Of a stretch of 64,000 bases of DNA, positions 576 through 9,422 are shown in pieces. The notes under the pieces are model-generated. The model was not told the origin of the DNA and searched no databases. It was given only the letters and a program-made list of their open reading frames with translations. A program made the position numbers and the translations under genes. The stretch comes from Mobula hypostoma. Its lineage: Eukaryota. The stretch spans positions 11,284,001 to 11,348,000 of the forward strand of contig NC_086106.1 in assembly GCF_963921235.1 (NCBI RefSeq), in the 5' to 3' direction. Within the stretch, counting starts at the first letter, position 1; every line of letters starts with the position of its first letter.

Positions 576-1834
576 TGAAAATGCTTTGCAGCCAGGTGAG
601 GTACAACTGAAGTGTATTCTCTTCTGGAAATGCTGGTCACTGCAGTCAGTGTAGGCACAACAAGATCCCAAGAACATTAAGGTTCCTGACCTGAGCCACA
701 TTGGCCCGAGTCAAGGAGCAGAGCTCGTGCTCATTGCTTGCCTGTGAAAATGGTGCACAGGCTTATACTCGCAGATTGGGTCTGCCTAGCTGCTGTGTCT
801 GAAGTAGAAAGGAATTTGCAAATCCGTGACGGTGGTGGAGTTCCCGCTTTTGGAGCCTGCCGAGCGGCCTGGCGTTCCAATAGCTCCAGGAGTGGCCTGG
901 AAGACGCATGCCTTCTGGGCCCCATCCCTCGCCAGAGTGCCAACTCTAGCATTGCGGGACAGCAGGACATCGAGACAGCGGGTGCGGCACTCTGTACTCG
1001 TGCGATTGTTCTCTCTCTCTCGATGGTGATAGAGAACTTGCGGCCGATTCTCGAGTCAGAGAAACTAAAAGCGACGCTGCAGACTGTAACATCAAAACGG
1101 CGAACTGTTGGCCTTCCCTCTCACAGTGGAAGGAGTGATACCTCTCTCTCCCTCGTTAGTAAGAGATACAGCCTGTGGCACTTTGCAAGTGCTCGGTTAT
1201 GAACTGGAATTTGTGATGGACTATAGATCACGGTCTTTGGGGGCTTGCTTATTGAGTGGGTGTTTGGGGGGGCCCCAGAACAATTGGGGGAGGGGAGGGT
1301 TGATGATTTGCTGCTGCTAGTGCATTGGGTGGGGGTTTTGGGGTTCTAACATTTGTCTGTCATTCATTCTTTGGGATTTGTCTCCTGTTTCGTGGATGTC
1401 TGTGAAGAGTAAGAATTTCAGGTTGTATACTATATACATTCTCTGTTATGTAACGGAAACATTGAACCATTTGTAAGAACGAGTCAAGAACTGGAAATCA
1501 AAGTCCAAAAATAAAGGCTCAGTCTTTAGGATTGAAATGAGAACCTTCCTCACTCGAGCATTTCAGAGTGAATTCTCTACCCAAGAGAGTTTCAGACAGG
1601 AATTGCATTCAAAACAGGGTGTGGTGGATTTCTAGATAAAAAGGAAACAAGAGATAAGGAATAAGGGTAGGAATCTTGTACTTGAGTTAGAGTATTAGGC
1701 TTATTATGGAATATCAGGTTTTTGGGTTTCTTTGTTTTGTGGCTGCCTGCAAGGAGATGAATCTCAAGGTTGTATATAGAATACATTCTTCAATAATGTG
1801 TACTTTGAACTTCGATGATCTTGCTAAATTGCAA

Positions 1835-2365
1835 AGGAGGTTGGTCAGATCGCACTTGAAGTACTGTGAGCAGTTTTGGGCCCCTTATCTAAGGAAGGAT
1901 GTGCTGGCTTTGGAGAGGGTCCAGAGGAGGTTCACAGGAATGATAGGGCAATAATTGATGGCTCTGGGCCTGTACTCGCTGCAGGGGAGTTCTCACTGAA
2001 ACCTATCGAATATTGAAAAGCCTAGATAGAATGGATGTGGAGAGGATGTGTCCTAGAGTTGGGGAGTCTAGGACCAGAGAGCACTGCTTCAGAAGGACAT
2101 CCCTTTAGAACAGAGATGAGAAGGAATTTTTTTTAGCCAAAGGATGATGAATCTGTGGAATTCATTGGCATAGATAGATGACTATGGAGGCCAAGTTATT
2201 TGGTATACTTAAAACAGTTTGTAAGCTTCTTGATTAGTCAGTGAGTCAAAGGTTACAGGGAGAAGGCAGGAATATGGGGTTCAGAGGGATAATAAATCAA
2301 TACGTTGGAATGGCGGAACAGATTTGATGGGCTGAATGGCTTAACTCTGCTCCGATGTCTTATGA
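1835..2365 (+). mobile_element. CR1/HER1-like LINE 3' fragment
   Basis: LVRSHLKYCEQFWAPYLRKDVLALERVQRRFT motif typical of CR1 ORF2 C-terminus, followed by the CR1 3' UTR. Confidence 0.8.
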
Positions 2366-2389
2366 ACATCTGACGTCCCACTCTTCCTG

Positions 2390-2614
2390 CAACACACACA
2401 AAATGCTGGTGAATGCAGCAGGCCAGGCAGCATCTATAGGAAGAGGTACAGTTGACGTTTCGGGCCGAGACCCAGAGTAAGATCCTGACGAAGGGTCTCA
2501 GCCCGAAATGTTGACTGTACCTCTTCCTATAGATGCTGCCTGGCCTGCTGCGTTCCACCAGCATTTTGTGTGTGTTACTTGAATTTCCAGCATCTGCAGA
2601 TTTCCTCGTATTTG
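2390..2614 (+). mobile_element. Penelope-derived fold-back element (inverted terminal repeat) with hammerhead-like core
   Basis: Arms ~2391-2473 and ~2492-2576 are reverse complements. Flanked by cgtcccactcttcctg (2374-2389) and cgtcctactcttcctg (2615-2630), a 16-bp TSD with 1 mismatch. Sequence matches the 3' end of the GIY-YIG elements at 22846 and 50128. Confidence 0.8.
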
Positions 2615-2927
2615 CGTCCTACTCTTCCTGTTTGTTTTAATTCAGTACAAGAGACATATTGGATCATTCAATAAGGTTCTGAGTTAGATAGAACAAAAAA
2701 CAGGCCATTCAGCCCCAATCATCCATGCCAACCAAGCAGTGCAATATCAGGGACTGATACAGCTATTTGTCACGGAATAGGCCATATAACCCTGGATATT
2801 GTTCTAGGTGGTGCTGGATCAGGGATAAAGTATAATCCAGGACTCCTTGAAGAAGTCACCTGTTGATATTGTTTGAAACTTCTAGCTGATAAGGAATAAC
2901 AGAATGTTACATGTAAAGATATTTTTG

Positions 2928-3264: not shown

Positions 3265-3532
3265 TTCCCTCCTCCTTCCCTTTCTCCTGTGGCCCACTTG
3301 CCTCTCCTATCAGATTCCTTCCTCTCCGGCCCTTAATTTTTCCCACCCACTTGGCTTCACCTATCCCCTTCTAGCTATCCTCCTTCCCCTTCCCCTCCAT
3401 CTTTTTATTCTAGTGTCTTCCCCCTTCCATTTCAGACCTGAAGAAGGACCTCGGCCCAAAACTGTTTATTCATCTCCACAGATGCTGCCTGACCTGCTGA
3501 GCTCCTCCAGCACATTGTGTGTGTTTTGCTTC
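3265..3532 (+). mobile_element. Penelope-like 3' terminal fragment
   Basis: CT-rich body, then ctgaagaaggacctcggcccaaaac and gatgctgcctgacctgctgagctcctccagcacattgtgtgtg, homologous to other Penelope termini in the window. Confidence 0.6.
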
Positions 3533-3881
3533 AAGGGAAAAGTGATGTTTTATTTTCTCCTGGAGGTCGTGCCTGCGAATGCAGATTCCATAAGTAATGG
3601 GGCTGTGAGCATAACTGGCATTCGTGAAGAATAAATTTTTTAAAAAACGCGAGCGGAGCTGCTGAGGTATTGGAACGAAGCACAAATTCTCCTTCTAACA
3701 CCCAAGACAAGAACGACTGGGACGTTTACTTGTTCTAAGAAAACAGTGGATTGGAATATGTTACAGCCTAAAAGAGCGGATCGGCTCCGGTTCGATTGAG
3801 ACAGCGCGATTCGAGACCTCATGCCAACAAGCAGGCACAAGGAAGCCCGGAGGCTTGGGAGGGACGAGTAGCCGGCTGGCT

Positions 3882-4235
3882 TTAATCCGGGCAGGGACCG
3901 CACTTCCCACCCCGCAGTTTCTGGATCATCTCTTCCAGGAGGCACCGGTTGGGTCCCTTGAACTGGAAGACCTTGGAGCCGTTCCTGTAGAACTGGAAGG
4001 TGGGGAACCACGCGATGCGGCAGCGCTGCACCACCTCCCTGGCCGCGTTGATGTCCACCTCGCAGAAGTGGACGTCCTGGTAGCGCTCGGCGAACTCGCC
4101 GAGGTACAGCCGGATCATCTGGCAGAACTCGCACCAGCTGGTGGAGAAGAGCACGACCACCAGCTGCCGGTGGCTGACCCGCAGCGCCGACGCCAAGTCC
4201 AGGACTCCGCTGACGGTCTTCACCCGGCTGTCCAT
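3882..4235 (-). CDS. Intronless thioredoxin-like protein (117 aa) with atypical WCEFC site and C-terminal CGPC
   Basis: Full thioredoxin-fold pattern: LVVVLFSTSWCxxC, F-x-EVD, cis-Pro loop FPTFQFY, NGSKV..FKGPN. ATG at 4235-4233 in good Kozak context (ACGATGG); TAA stop; AATAAA on the - strand at 3554-3549; no disabling mutations. Confidence 0.88.
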   Translation of the reverse strand: MDSRVKTVSGVLDLASALRVSHRQLVVVLFSTSWCEFCQMIRLYLGEFAERYQDVHFCEVDINAAREVVQRCRIAWFPTFQFYRNGSKVFQFKGPNRCLLEEMIQKLRGGKCGPCPD

Positions 4236-4259
4236 CGTCGCCCCGCCTGAGTGAGACCC

Positions 4260-5520
4260 CCGGCCAATTACTGACGTCAGCCGACGTGGCACTCAAGCAC
4301 TTTCCGCAACGCCATTGGTCAACGCCTTACGGTGGCCCTTGCCCTAGCCAATGGGCTCGGTCCTTTTCCATATCATAGCAACGAATGTTAAAAATATAAG
4401 ACTGCGTACTCCACGCCAAATTATTACACATCGCCGCACATTTCATCATTAGTGATTCAACCGTTAACTGTGGCACATTTGTCAGAACATGTTTGAGCTG
4501 AGTTGTGTTTAAGGAACGAAATTTAAGACAAGAGCATGCTCTCCTCCGATTGATCCATGCTGTTGTCAGTCATGGTTCCTCCCCGCCTCTACCGTGATCG
4601 GTGGGGAGAGCAGCCAATCCGCGCTGGAGAGCGGGAGCCCTGCCCTCCCATTGGTCGTCAGACGCCGAGGTGGCACCAATGGCAGCGCCGAGGGGGCGTC
4701 TGCCTCCGGTCGGCGAGTCTTGATTGCCCGGAGCGCGGCAGCTGGGAAAAACAAGACGAAGTCGGCGGGGAGCGGGTAGTTGATGGCGGTCAGGCGGCGG
4801 CGGTGATGATGATGATCGGGGCGCTGAAAACTCCCGTGCAGAGTCGCTCGAAAGTAACTCAGCAGGTAGGCGATCTTGGGGGAATCCGCTTCACTTTGAA
4901 GGTTTTGTTAGTATTTTTTTTTGGAGCGCCCGCTATAACTAAGGGTGAGAGTGGGCTACTCGACGGAGCAGGCAGTGTGAACGGTCCCCAGGTGTCCTGG
5001 CAGGGACTTTGCGGCTGCTCTGGGACCCCCAGGGTTGGGGTCGGGTGCCGAAGTGCCGAGGAAGGTGGGGGTGGTGGTCGCTAAATGTCGTTGGGGGGGG
5101 CCAGAAGAGCTAGGGTTGCCCCCACTGCGCATGTGCGTGGCGCACAGGCTGGGAGTTGGAGTCCAGCGGAACTTCGGCTCTCTTTCCAAGTATCGCCTGG
5201 CGTTTGGGGGTGTTGTCCGAAGGGAGAGGCCGAAATCCGCTCGACGGGTTGTGGGGTGGGGGGGATGTGAGGGAGCCTTCCTCCCCCCACCCTTCAGCGG
5301 CTCCGAGGCTGGGTCGTGTGCCTACAATTCCCAGCGTGCCTCGGGCCTTTTTTAAAAAAAAGAACAGGTGGGACGAAGCTGCCGACTGGGCATGCGCAGT
5401 GGGTCCGGCGCAGATGGGCGGCCGGAGGCTCCGGGTTTCCGCCCACGGTCCGGCAGCGGAGGCGGCCGCCGGCGCGGGGGTGGGGAGGAGGGAGACGGGG
5501 CTGATGCTCACTCGGAGCAC
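4260..5520. promoter_or_regulatory. CpG-island bidirectional promoter between thioredoxin-like (-) and SERTAD3-like (+)
   Basis: CpG-rich. Perfect CRE TGACGTCA 4272-4279; CCAAT/ATTGG at 4264, 4314, 4348, 4614, 4650, 4676; GC box 4581-4587; NRF1-like TGCGCATGTGC ~5126 and GCATGCGCA ~5390; ZNF143/Staf-type CTACAATTCCCAGCGTGC 5322-5339. Confidence 0.75.
4806..4865 (+). CDS. Putative first coding segment (exon 1 3' end) of SERTAD3-like gene, giving an optional N-terminal extension
   Basis: ATGATGATG...CAGCAG followed by donor GTAGGC at 4866; phase 0 and in frame with the acceptor at 8613 (GTC CCA ATG GTC GGG AAG). Confidence 0.45.
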
Positions 5521-8618: not shown

Positions 8619-9422
8619 ATGGTCGGGAAGGGTGTGAAGCGAAAGCGCCTTGCCGAAGGGGGCCTGGACTCCTTCCAGAATCTGGCCGACTGCCCACAGT
8701 CCTACAGCCTCAAGCGGCAGCTGGTGCTCAACACCTCACTGAATAAGATGCAGAGCGGGCGCGCGCTGCCCGAGCTCAGCCTCCGGCGCACCGTGCTGAT
8801 CGCCAACACCCTGCGGCAGATCCAGGAGGAGATCCGGCTGGAGAGTAGCCAGCTGGTGTCGGCCATGGACTTGGAGGTGGGCGGGGCGGAGCAGGGCGTC
8901 CCGCGGGAGCCCTTGCCTTCGCGGCTGACCACAGAGAGCTACCCGGCCAGCTTTGGGGATGGCCTTGAGGACTACATGGCCATTGCCTCCGACGAAGACT
9001 TCTCCCTGTCCTCCGCCATTAACTCCATTCTCCGGGACCTTGACCTAGTCATCGACGGGAGCCCTCCGTTGTCGTCCCCACAGGACGCGGTAGAGACAAT
9101 GGACCTAGCAGGGGAAGAGGGAGCTCAATCCTCAGATCCTCCTAGACCCCTGGAGTCGGTGTTTGGCAGTTTTGAGATCATGAGCTCCAGCTACCTCGTA
9201 GGTGTGACCTTGGACGACCTCTTCCTCGACATTGACACGTCCGTGTGCGACTGCGACGTAGCGGGCTCGGTTCCCGGCGGCCGGGTGGCTCCCCCGGGCC
9301 CGGCTGAAGATTCAGGCAAGAGTTTCCCCTCGTGCAATTCCTCGTCGCTTGGGGCCAGTCCGAGTTTAAGGACGGACCTAAATGACCTCGATCACATCAT
9401 GGAAATCCTGGTCAGTTCCTAA
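8619..9422 (+). CDS. SERTAD3: SERTA domain-containing protein (SERTAD3-like, TRIP-Br family), 267 aa
   Basis: N-terminal MVGKGVKRK; SERTA motif SLRRTVLIANTLRQIQEE; central DFSLSSAINSILRDL; DDLFLDIDTS; C-terminal DLNDLDHIMEILVSS. Splice acceptor AG 8611-8612 lies just before the ATG. SERTAD3 versus SERTAD2/CDCA4 assignment relies on the tandem position upstream of SERTAD1. Confidence 0.85.
   Translation: MVGKGVKRKRLAEGGLDSFQNLADCPQSYSLKRQLVLNTSLNKMQSGRALPELSLRRTVLIANTLRQIQEEIRLESSQLVSAMDLEVGGAEQGVPREPLPSRLTTESYPASFGDGLEDYMAIASDEDFSLSSAINSILRDLDLVIDGSPPLSSPQDAVETMDLAGEEGAQSSDPPRPLESVFGSFEIMSSSYLVGVTLDDLFLDIDTSVCDCDVAGSVPGGRVAPPGPAEDSGKSFPSCNSSSLGASPSLRTDLNDLDHIMEILVSS

What the first reader, a model, noticed from the sequence alone, without database searches (positions are those of the whole stretch)
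3882..4235. Thioredoxin with a displaced catalytic motif: WCEFC in the fold, canonical CGPC on a C-terminal tail
Seen: the active-site position (4136-4122) encodes WCEFC rather than WCGPC. The usual buried acidic residue (VVDF) is Leu (VVLF) and the helix-2 proline (MIKP) is Leu. After the last helix the protein continues -RGGKCGPCPD*, placing a perfect CGPC (3902-3891) on a Gly-linked tail; there are 7 Cys in 117 aa. Known: CGPC is the signature thioredoxin dithiol, the XX residues tune redox potential, and flexible C-terminal redox pairs shuttle electrons in large thioredoxin reductases. Inference: a two-dithiol mini-oxidoreductase with an intramolecular relay arm or a metal-binding site. 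I do not recognise this architecture in vertebrate TXN or TXNDC8.
Basis: partly seen in the sequence, partly recalled or inferred. Interest (0 to 1): 0.8.

Follow-up and report, generated by a model that had tools for sequence, protein, structure and literature searches.

The report
Shark-and-ray thioredoxin copy with altered active site
This is a real, expressed, intron-free copy of the thioredoxin gene that all sharks and rays examined share; its unusual WCEFC active site is conserved, but the "second" CGPC motif on the tail is a recent stingray-only change, not a conserved part of the protein.

Summary
Window 3882-4235(-) encodes a 117-aa thioredoxin-fold protein with WCEFC at the active site. 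Leu replaces the buried Asp26, Leu replaces Pro40, there are seven Cys, and the tail ends -KCGPCPD.

Six orthologues (stingray, skate, sawfish, three sharks) all keep WCEFC, L29, L43, C72 and C98. None has the tail CGPC: Hypanus, at 88% identity, has CGPW, and the others have unrelated, longer tails. AlphaFold2 models the tail as disordered.

What is conserved is a single-exon, presumably retroposed, TXN-family gene. It lies head-to-head with a SERTA-domain gene in every species where a neighbouring gene was listed. Its promoter is conserved across three batoid orders. RNA contigs from four runs show a roughly 530-nt unspliced transcript.

The clade is monophyletic (100/100) on a very long stem with a short crown. 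Eight clade-invariant residues never seen in 43 ordinary TXNs lie mostly on the active-site and substrate face.

My reading is a neofunctionalised thiol-disulfide oxidoreductase with changed redox tuning and partners. This function is inferred, not shown. It is a new variant of a known kind and of moderate interest.

The parts
3882..4235 (-). Single-exon CDS (117 aa plus stop) of the WCEFC thioredoxin-like protein
   Evidence: Orthologous single-exon CDS in six other elasmobranchs.
4122..4136 (-). Active-site motif W34-C35-E36-F37-C38, with identical codons TGG TGC GAG TTC TGC in three batoid orders
   Evidence: Invariant in 7 of 7 species. Codons. E and F never occur at these positions in 43 TXNs.
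3885..3911 (-). Variable C-terminal tail G109-D117 holding CGPC (3891-3902), which is restricted to this stingray lineage
   Evidence: pLDDT about 46. Identical in the RNA contigs of organisms A, B and D.
3711..3881 (-). 3' UTR of about 171 nt. A variant poly(A) signal AGTAAA lies at 3730-3725. RNA contigs end at 3711-3731.
4272..4279 (-). Palindromic CRE TGACGTCA, preceded by CACGTCG, about 40 nt upstream of the ATG. It is invariant in stingray, sawfish and skate.
4301..4399 (-). Conserved promoter block: CCAAT box at 4318-4314, inverted CCAAT at 4352-4348, and a nearly invariant 29-nt block at 4399-4371 that holds GTTGCTATGA
   Evidence: No RNA depth over 4258-4651, so the transcript starts between about 4240 and 4257.
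4720..4867 (+). Context: first (non-coding) exon of the divergently transcribed SERTA-domain gene, whose CDS is at 8619-9422(+)
   Evidence: Spliced RNA contigs of 1.4-2.2 kb lie only partly on this stretch. Pfam SERTA matches at E 1.6e-15. The same neighbour is listed in Hypanus, Pristis, Carcharodon and Scyliorhinus.

Best explanation
A TXN-family gene lost its introns, most simply by retroposition of an mRNA, and settled next to a SERTA-domain gene before sharks and batoids split. After a burst of change it has been kept as an expressed gene for a divergent thioredoxin. The fold, Trp34, both active-site cysteines and the cis-proline are retained. It therefore most likely still works as a thiol-disulfide oxidoreductase: Cys35 attacks a disulfide and Cys38 resolves the mixed disulfide. 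The extended active site has been rebuilt: Gly-Pro to Glu-Phe, buried Asp26 to Leu, Pro40 to Leu, Cys73-Met74 to Trp-Phe, Ser90 to Lys, Ala92 to Pro, Glu95 to Cys. These changes should shift cysteine pKa and redox potential and replace the partner-binding surface, including most thioredoxin-reductase contacts. Shown: gene structure, conservation, synteny, transcription and fold. Inferred: the redox activity and the altered specificity. The C-terminal CGPC is a young, lineage-restricted product of a freely evolving disordered tail and is not part of the conserved mechanism.
For: The ORF and motifs are confirmed. Seven species share an invariant WCEFC, L29, L43, C72, W76-F77-P78 and K93-G94-P95-N96-R97-C98, with no indel over residues 3-109. 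Every orthologue has a single-exon CDS. The canonical elasmobranch TXN-like genes instead have five exons over 12 kb (Pristis) or span 19.8 kb (Carcharodon) on other chromosomes. A SERTA gene is the neighbour in five species. The promoter is conserved across three batoid orders. One unspliced contig covering 3711/3731 to 4233/4240 appears in each of four RNA runs from three taxa, with zero depth in the flanks. The AlphaFold2 model has pLDDT 86.8 and superposes on human TXN at 0.8 A. The clade has 100/100 support, a stem of 1.0-1.25 substitutions per site and crown branches of 0.04-0.22. For the same species pair, Carcharodon and Pristis, this protein is 63% identical against 50.5% for the multi-exon TXN-like gene. 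The best-fitting codon model, GY+F3X4, gives omega 0.15, and omega = 1 is rejected at p 9e-12. Eight clade-invariant residues never occur in 43 TXNs. Seven of them lie in or next to the CxxC motif, in the buried acid position or the helix-2 proline, or among the partner-contact residues of human Trx1 listed in PMC10812433 Table 7. Only 3 of those 17 contact residues are kept.
Against: There is no biochemical evidence. Simple counting gives dN/dS of 0.54-0.84, and an equal-codon-frequency model cannot reject omega = 1. The low omega depends on accepting the extreme GC3 (0.90-0.94) as background composition. All five CDS differences from close relatives are non-synonymous, although all fall at variable positions. 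Loss of Asp26, of the Gly-Pro dipeptide and of Pro40 could instead mean loss of ordinary reductase activity. The tissue of expression is unknown. The parent gene is unresolved.
Confidence: 0.6

Rival explanations
1. Pseudo-enzyme or adaptor. The protein keeps the fold and uses the rebuilt aromatic surface (W34, F37, W76, F77) to bind a partner. It has lost catalytic turnover, and the cysteines serve as a redox sensor or play a structural role.
For: The proposed acid/base Asp26, the Gly-Pro dipeptide and Pro40 are all lost, invariantly. These belong to the extended active-site motif (PMC3961690; PMC3720550). 14 of the 17 Trx1 partner-contact residues are changed.
Against: Both cysteines, Trp34 and the cis-Pro are invariant over the whole clade. 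Other Trx-fold reductases work without the buried acid (PMC3720550 and PMC3961690).
Confidence: 0.15
2. Metal- or iron-sulfur-binding thioredoxin. Removing the proline from CxxC and adding Glu36, perhaps with C98 or C72 or through dimerisation, creates a metal or [2Fe-2S] site, as in glutaredoxins whose CxxC motif lacks proline.
For: The CxxC motif has no Pro and holds an acidic residue. There are two further invariant cysteines, C72 and C98. The glutaredoxin precedent (Fe-S clusters in CSYC/CGYC types) comes from my own knowledge and was not tested here.
Against: The cis-Pro78 is retained. From memory, this proline is reported to prevent metal binding by thioredoxin-family active sites. C72 is equivalent to human C69 and so is not new. 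No coordinates were available to test the geometry.
Confidence: 0.12
3. The reader's model, restricted to this stingray lineage. The flexible tail CGPC acts as a second dithiol that shuttles electrons to or from the WCEFC site.
For: The exact CGPC is real and is shared by three closely related taxa. It sits on a Gly-rich, disordered tail. From helix geometry, that tail is about long enough to reach the active-site face; this is inference only.
Against: The motif is absent in Hypanus (CGPW) and in all other orthologues. The most economical codon path, Tyr to Cys to Trp, implies Hypanus lost it without losing the gene (inference). The tail has the highest replacement rate of the protein and was shortened by a nonsense change. 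The model shows no docking of the tail.
Confidence: 0.07
4. A decaying retro-pseudogene or a neutral ORF that looks conserved only because elasmobranch DNA evolves slowly.
For: dN/dS by counting is 0.5-0.8. Third codon positions are as conserved as second positions. The differences from close relatives are five non-synonymous and none synonymous.
Against: There is no stop or frameshift in seven species and no indel across 107 codons, whereas the flanking DNA is gapped or unalignable. Replacement rates differ about five-fold between the N-terminus (dN about 0.5) and the core (0.08-0.16). The promoter is conserved and the gene is transcribed. It evolves more slowly than the canonical TXN-like gene in the same species pair.
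Confidence: 0.03

Closest known systems
Vertebrate cytosolic thioredoxin TXN/Trx1 (for example human, PDB 1ERU/1ERV)
   Same: Same fold (TM 0.96, rmsd 0.8 A). Collinear over residues 5-107 at about 37-46% identity. Trp-Cys..Cys, the cis-Pro, the PTFQF strand, C69 and G91/N93 are kept.
   Different: CEFC instead of CGPC. Asp26 to Leu, Pro40 to Leu, Cys73-Met74 to Trp-Phe, Ala92 to Pro, Glu95 to Cys. 14 of 17 partner-contact residues differ. Single exon instead of five. Different locus. A 10- to 16-residue tail.
TXNDC2 / Sptrx-1, the spermatid-specific thioredoxin
   Same: From memory (Miranda-Vizuete et al. 2001, not found in the paper library), it is also an intron-free TXN-derived gene, so there is precedent for a retained thioredoxin retrocopy.
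   Different: TXNDC2 keeps WCGPC and, from memory, carries a long N-terminal repeat region. Its Trx domain groups with mammalian TXN and not with this clade. It is a separate event in a different lineage.
TXNDC8 / Sptrx-3
   Same: A small single-domain TXN paralogue. A TXNDC8 cluster appears among the feature look-alikes.
   Different: The one TXNDC8 available (turtle, P0150) has WCGPC and Asp26 and does not group with the clade.
C-terminal redox arm of large thioredoxin reductases
   Same: A Cys pair on a flexible C-terminal extension.
   Different: In those enzymes the arm is conserved and essential (established knowledge). Here it is missing in all orthologues outside one stingray lineage.

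Membership tests
Thioredoxin family (Pfam PF00085, TXN-type) | Thioredoxin fold | tested here: met
   Pfam E 7e-17. AlphaFold2 pLDDT 86.8. Foldseek top hits are human TXN, rmsd 0.8 A.
Thioredoxin family (Pfam PF00085, TXN-type) | Trp-Cys-x-x-Cys at the start of helix 2 | tested here: met
   W34-C35-x-x-C38 is invariant in 7 species. Helix 2 starts at residue 36 in the model.
Thioredoxin family (Pfam PF00085, TXN-type) | Gly-Pro dipeptide between the cysteines (CGPC) | tested here: not met
   Glu-Phe in all 7 species. E and F occur 0 times in 43 TXNs at these columns.
Thioredoxin family (Pfam PF00085, TXN-type) | Buried acidic residue six positions before the first Cys (Asp26) | tested here: not met
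   Leu29 is invariant, whereas Asp occurs in 41 of 43 TXNs. The role of this residue is described in PMC3961690.
Thioredoxin family (Pfam PF00085, TXN-type) | Helix-2 proline (Pro40) and the cis-proline (Pro75) | tested here: inconclusive
   Pro40 is replaced by an invariant Leu43, whereas Pro occurs in 43 of 43 TXNs. Pro75 is kept as Pro78. The cis conformation could not be checked because no coordinates were accessible.
Thioredoxin family (Pfam PF00085, TXN-type) | Disulfide reductase activity recycled by thioredoxin reductase | not testable with these tools
   Of the TrxR-contact residues of human Trx1 (PMC10812433 Table 7), only Trp31 and Cys32 are kept.
Processed retrogene | Intron-free copy of a multi-exon parent at an unrelated locus | tested here: met
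   Single-exon CDS in 7 species and an unspliced RNA contig. The canonical TXN-like gene has 5 exons on another chromosome.
Processed retrogene | Poly(A) remnant, target-site duplications and an identified parent gene | not tested
   These are not expected to survive since before the shark-ray split. The parent is unresolved: the clade's position among vertebrate TXNs is a polytomy, and the AU test against the elasmobranch TXN-like clade gives p 0.049 and 0.08.
TXNDC8 / TXNDC2 (sperm thioredoxins) | Groups with those paralogues in a tree | tested here: not met
   One sequence of each was tested. Neither joins the WCEFC clade.
Two-dithiol enzyme with a C-terminal relay arm | The second Cys pair is conserved among orthologues | tested here: not met
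   CGPC occurs only in the window's lineage. Hypanus has CGPW and the other orthologues have unrelated tails.

The most novel reading that the evidence does not exclude
Elasmobranchs carry an uncharacterised thioredoxin subfamily in which the whole extended active site was replaced in one burst (CEFC, no buried acid, no helix-2 proline, an aromatic Trp-Phe wall, a new invariant Cys98) and then frozen.
Probability: 0.3. Interest if true: 0.6.

Novelty: new variant of a known kind. Interest (0 to 1): 0.4.

Why it matters
The CxxC dipeptide, the buried acid and the prolines are the textbook controls of thioredoxin reactivity. Here nature changed all of them together and then held the result fixed since before sharks and rays diverged. 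That makes the protein a ready-made natural experiment on how the thioredoxin fold is re-tuned. It is also an example of a retained ancient retrogene in cartilaginous fishes. The gene is only auto-annotated as 'thioredoxin-like', and the motif WCEFC does not occur in a thioredoxin context in the searched literature. The finding also shows that an eye-catching motif, CGPC on a tail, can be a lineage-specific accident.

Tried and rejected
(1) Second copy nearby. Two sharks have a second single-exon 105-aa Trx gene 7-9 kb downstream. tblastn found no such copy in the window or in the skate and sawfish loci. A look-up of the Heptranchias two-domain model found no record.

(2) Parent gene. The first tree put the clade beside amniote TXN (92/99, not starred). 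With slightly different sampling this dissolved into a polytomy. The AU tests were borderline. I make no claim about the parent.

(3) dN/dS. The result depends wholly on the codon-frequency model. I rely on the absence of indels, rate heterogeneity, the stem/crown contrast and the same-species comparison with the canonical gene, rather than on one omega value.

(4) Tissue of expression. Run metadata are coded and the word filter does not take tissues, so testis specificity could not be tested.

(5) Tail-to-active-site distance. Only the low pLDDT of the tail can be reported.

(6) Literature. Searches for CEFC or WCEFC with thioredoxin, and for Sptrx with intronless, returned nothing relevant.

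(7) The protein atlas gave only generic thioredoxin clusters.

(8) A search of earlier scan notes for 'thioredoxin' found nothing.

Full report
**Observation.** The minus strand of the window carries an ORF from the ATG at 4235 to the TAA at 3884-3882, encoding 117 aa.
- It matches Pfam Thioredoxin at E 7e-17.
- It aligns without a gap to human thioredoxin over residues 5-107, at E about 1e-20. Window residue number equals the human number plus 3.
WCEFC lies at 4136-4122. Leu29 stands at the Asp26 position and Leu43 at the Pro40 position. The cis-proline is kept as Pro78. There are seven cysteines, and the tail ends ...RGGKCGPCPD with CGPC at 3902-3891.
- RNA contigs of the same species reproduce the CDS and tail without a difference.

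**Orthologues.** The word-indexed search of 5.8 billion proteins found six close relatives, all auto-named 'thioredoxin-like':

| Species | Identity to window |
|---|---|
| Hypanus sabinus | 88% |
| Amblyraja radiata | 74% |
| Pristis pectinata | 66% |
| Hemiscyllium ocellatum | 65% |
| Carcharodon carcharias | 64% |
| Scyliorhinus canicula | 60% |

- The exhaustive HMMER search of 1.84 billion cluster representatives found only one close single-domain cluster. The only other hit below 1e-30 is a nine-domain protein. The single-domain hits inspected are at most 43% identical.
- Among the 150 best hits, WCEFC occurs only in this clade.
- In the seven-species alignment, 51 positions are invariant. 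They include W34-C35-E36-F37-C38, L29, L43, C72, W76-F77-P78-T79-F80-Q81-F82 and F90 through L100. There is no indel between residues 3 and 109.
- The tail is the opposite. Hypanus has CGPW. The skate has GARSYPELNPAKS, the sawfish GSRSFPKLSPAGH and the sharks D(D/G)S(Q/R)C.P.L.....
- At the DNA level, the stingray stop TAA lines up with a Leu codon (TTA/CTA) of skate and sawfish. C-G-P-C lines up with (A/S)-R-S-(Y/F).
- The tail was therefore shortened by a nonsense change and rewritten by point substitutions.
- Tyr to Cys to Trp is the shortest codon path. CGPC was therefore probably present in the common ancestor of Hypanus and the window species and then lost in Hypanus. This step is inference.
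- Two closely related taxa (organisms B and D, about 98% identical) keep the tail unchanged.

**Gene structure and origin.**
- In all six orthologues the called gene range equals the CDS length, so each is a single exon.
- The multi-exon TXN-like gene of Pristis has five exons over 12 kb on another chromosome. That of Carcharodon spans 19.8 kb.
- The WCEFC gene is collinear across all four intron positions. An intron-free copy at an unrelated locus is the signature of retroposition.
- A SERTA-domain gene lies head-to-head with it in Hypanus, Pristis, Carcharodon and Scyliorhinus. In the window the SERTA CDS is at 8619-9422(+), with a first exon at about 4720-4867.
- The insertion therefore predates the shark-batoid split.
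- In trees the clade is monophyletic (100/100) on a stem of 1.0-1.25 substitutions per site, with crown branches of only 0.04-0.22.
- Its place among vertebrate TXNs is unresolved. An apparent affinity to amniote TXN vanished with slightly different sampling.
- AU tests of union with the elasmobranch TXN-like clade gave p 0.049 and 0.08.
- The clade does not join the one TXNDC8 or the TXNDC2 thioredoxin domain that I could obtain.

**Is it a working gene?**
- *Transcription.* Each of four RNA runs from three taxa holds one contig of 507-527 nt covering 3711/3731 to 4233/4240. None is spliced. Depth is zero over 4258-4651. The neighbouring SERTA exon appears as part of spliced 1.4-2.2 kb contigs, which shows that these are RNA libraries. 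The contigs end 10-20 nt after an AGTAAA signal at 3730-3725.
- *Promoter.* The 165 nt upstream of the ATG hold blocks that are identical in stingray, sawfish and skate. These are CACGTCG.CTGACGTCAG with a full CRE at 4279-4272, a CCAAT box at 4318-4314, an inverted CCAAT at 4352-4348, and a 29-nt block at 4399-4371.
- *Coding constraint.* The result here needs care.
  - Nei-Gojobori counting gives dN/dS of 0.54-0.84 among the three batoids with DNA available.
  - A codon model with equal frequencies cannot reject omega = 1.
  - The far better-fitting GY+F3X4 model (lnL -875 against -939) gives omega 0.15 and rejects omega = 1 at p 9e-12.
  - The cause of the discrepancy is an extreme GC3 of 0.90-0.94, which makes third positions as conserved as second positions.
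- *Independent yardsticks* agree with constraint:
  - The first 16 codons have dN about equal to dS at about 0.5, while the core has dN of 0.08-0.16.
  - Flanking DNA is 70-77% identical to sawfish, and to skate it aligns only with many gaps (46-64% identity). The 107 core codons have no indel in seven species.
  - For the same species pair, Carcharodon and Pristis, this protein is 63% identical against 50.5% for the canonical TXN-like gene.
- The five CDS differences from close relatives are all non-synonymous. They all fall at positions that vary across the clade.
- The protein is thus a mosaic of a frozen core and free positions. It is not a decaying copy.

**Structure.** AlphaFold2 with a 50-sequence alignment gives a confident thioredoxin fold (mean pLDDT 86.8, pTM 0.81). 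Residues 111-117 average pLDDT 46. Foldseek's best matches are human thioredoxin structures (TM 0.96 on the target, rmsd 0.8 A). The model gives the tail no docked position. I could not measure distances because coordinates are not exposed.

**Where the protein changed.**
- I compared the seven clade members with 43 ordinary TXNs. Eight clade-invariant residues never occur in the TXN set:

| Window residue | Human TXN residue |
|---|---|
| L29 | D26 |
| E36 | G33 |
| F37 | P34 |
| L43 | P40 |
| W76 | C73 |
| F77 | M74 |
| P95 | A92 |
| C98 | E95 |

- K93 (S90), Q91 (E88) and L99 (K96) are nearly as exclusive.
- PMC10812433 Table 7 lists 17 residues of human Trx1 that contact TrxR, TXNIP or SlrP in solved complexes. 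Only W31, C32 and P75 are kept here. Most of the rest are replaced by new, invariant residues.
- The acid six residues before the first cysteine, and the Gly or Pro between the cysteines, are parts of the 'extended active-site motif' that sets cysteine pKa (PMC3961690). Thioredoxin-fold reductases that lack the acid do exist (PMC3720550).
- The divergence is therefore concentrated on the catalytic and substrate face. It happened on the stem branch and was then fixed. This is the pattern of neofunctionalisation.

**Mechanism (inferred).**
- Trp34, both cysteines and the cis-proline are invariant. The most likely activity therefore remains thiol-disulfide exchange through Cys35 and Cys38.
- Redox potential and pKa should be altered by an acidic residue and an aromatic residue in the motif and by the missing buried acid.
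- The binding groove is now aromatic (W34, F37, W76, F77) and most thioredoxin-reductase contacts are lost.
- I put about 0.6 on this reading, 0.15 on a non-catalytic binder or sensor, 0.12 on a metal or Fe-S site, 0.07 on a stingray-specific tail relay and 0.03 on a neutral ORF.

**Comparison and novelty.**
- The protein works like, and descends from, vertebrate TXN. It fails three sequence criteria of a canonical thioredoxin: CGPC, Asp26 and Pro40.
- The nearest precedent for a retained intron-free TXN copy is mammalian TXNDC2/Sptrx-1. I know this from memory and could not confirm it in the library. TXNDC2 is a separate event and keeps CGPC.
- No paper in the searched library mentions WCEFC or CEFC in a thioredoxin context.
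- I class it as a new variant of a known kind and of moderate interest.

Noticed in passing
Shark loci of P0005 (Hemiscyllium) and P0006 (Carcharodon), 7-9.5 kb downstream of the WCEFC gene: A second single-exon thioredoxin gene of 105 aa lies on the same strand. No such copy lies within 10 kb in skate or sawfish, or within the 3.9 kb available in the window. Its sequence could not be fetched. It may be a tandem sister of the WCEFC gene.
   Followed up: partly
window 1697-2681 and 3273-3666: These interspersed repeats have enormous summed depth in RNA contigs, up to 2e5. Loose-end consensus sequences at 3461 hold CTGATGA...GAAAC, the hammerhead ribozyme core. This fits the earlier scan note of a Penelope-derived hammerhead element at 2374-2630.
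   Followed up: partly
window 3885-4235 and the skate and sawfish orthologues (L001, L002): GC3 is 0.90-0.94, and codons in the conserved blocks are identical across three batoid orders. Synonymous sites are about 2-3 times more conserved than the flanks or the N-terminal codons. Biased gene conversion, CpG-island context or constraint at the RNA level could each explain this. It is unexplained.
   Followed up: partly
window 4371-4399 (minus strand): A 29-nt promoter block, TTATATTTTTAACA..CGTTGCTATGATA, is nearly invariant in stingray, sawfish and skate. The GTTGCTATG part resembles an RFX/X-box half-site. That resemblance is from memory and was not tested.
   Followed up: no
P0018/P0270 (Heptranchias), P0286/P0287/P0298 (Mobula): Elasmobranch TXN-like genes vary in other ways too. 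The Heptranchias 'isoforms' join two thioredoxin domains (WCGPC and WCMPC), probably by read-through of tandem genes. Mobula has WCQPC copies in which the residue before the cis-Pro is Leu.
   Followed up: no
window 46246-47112(-) and 54381-55055(-): Two ORFs of 288 and 224 aa have no Pfam match. They are probably chance ORFs or repeat-derived.
   Followed up: partly
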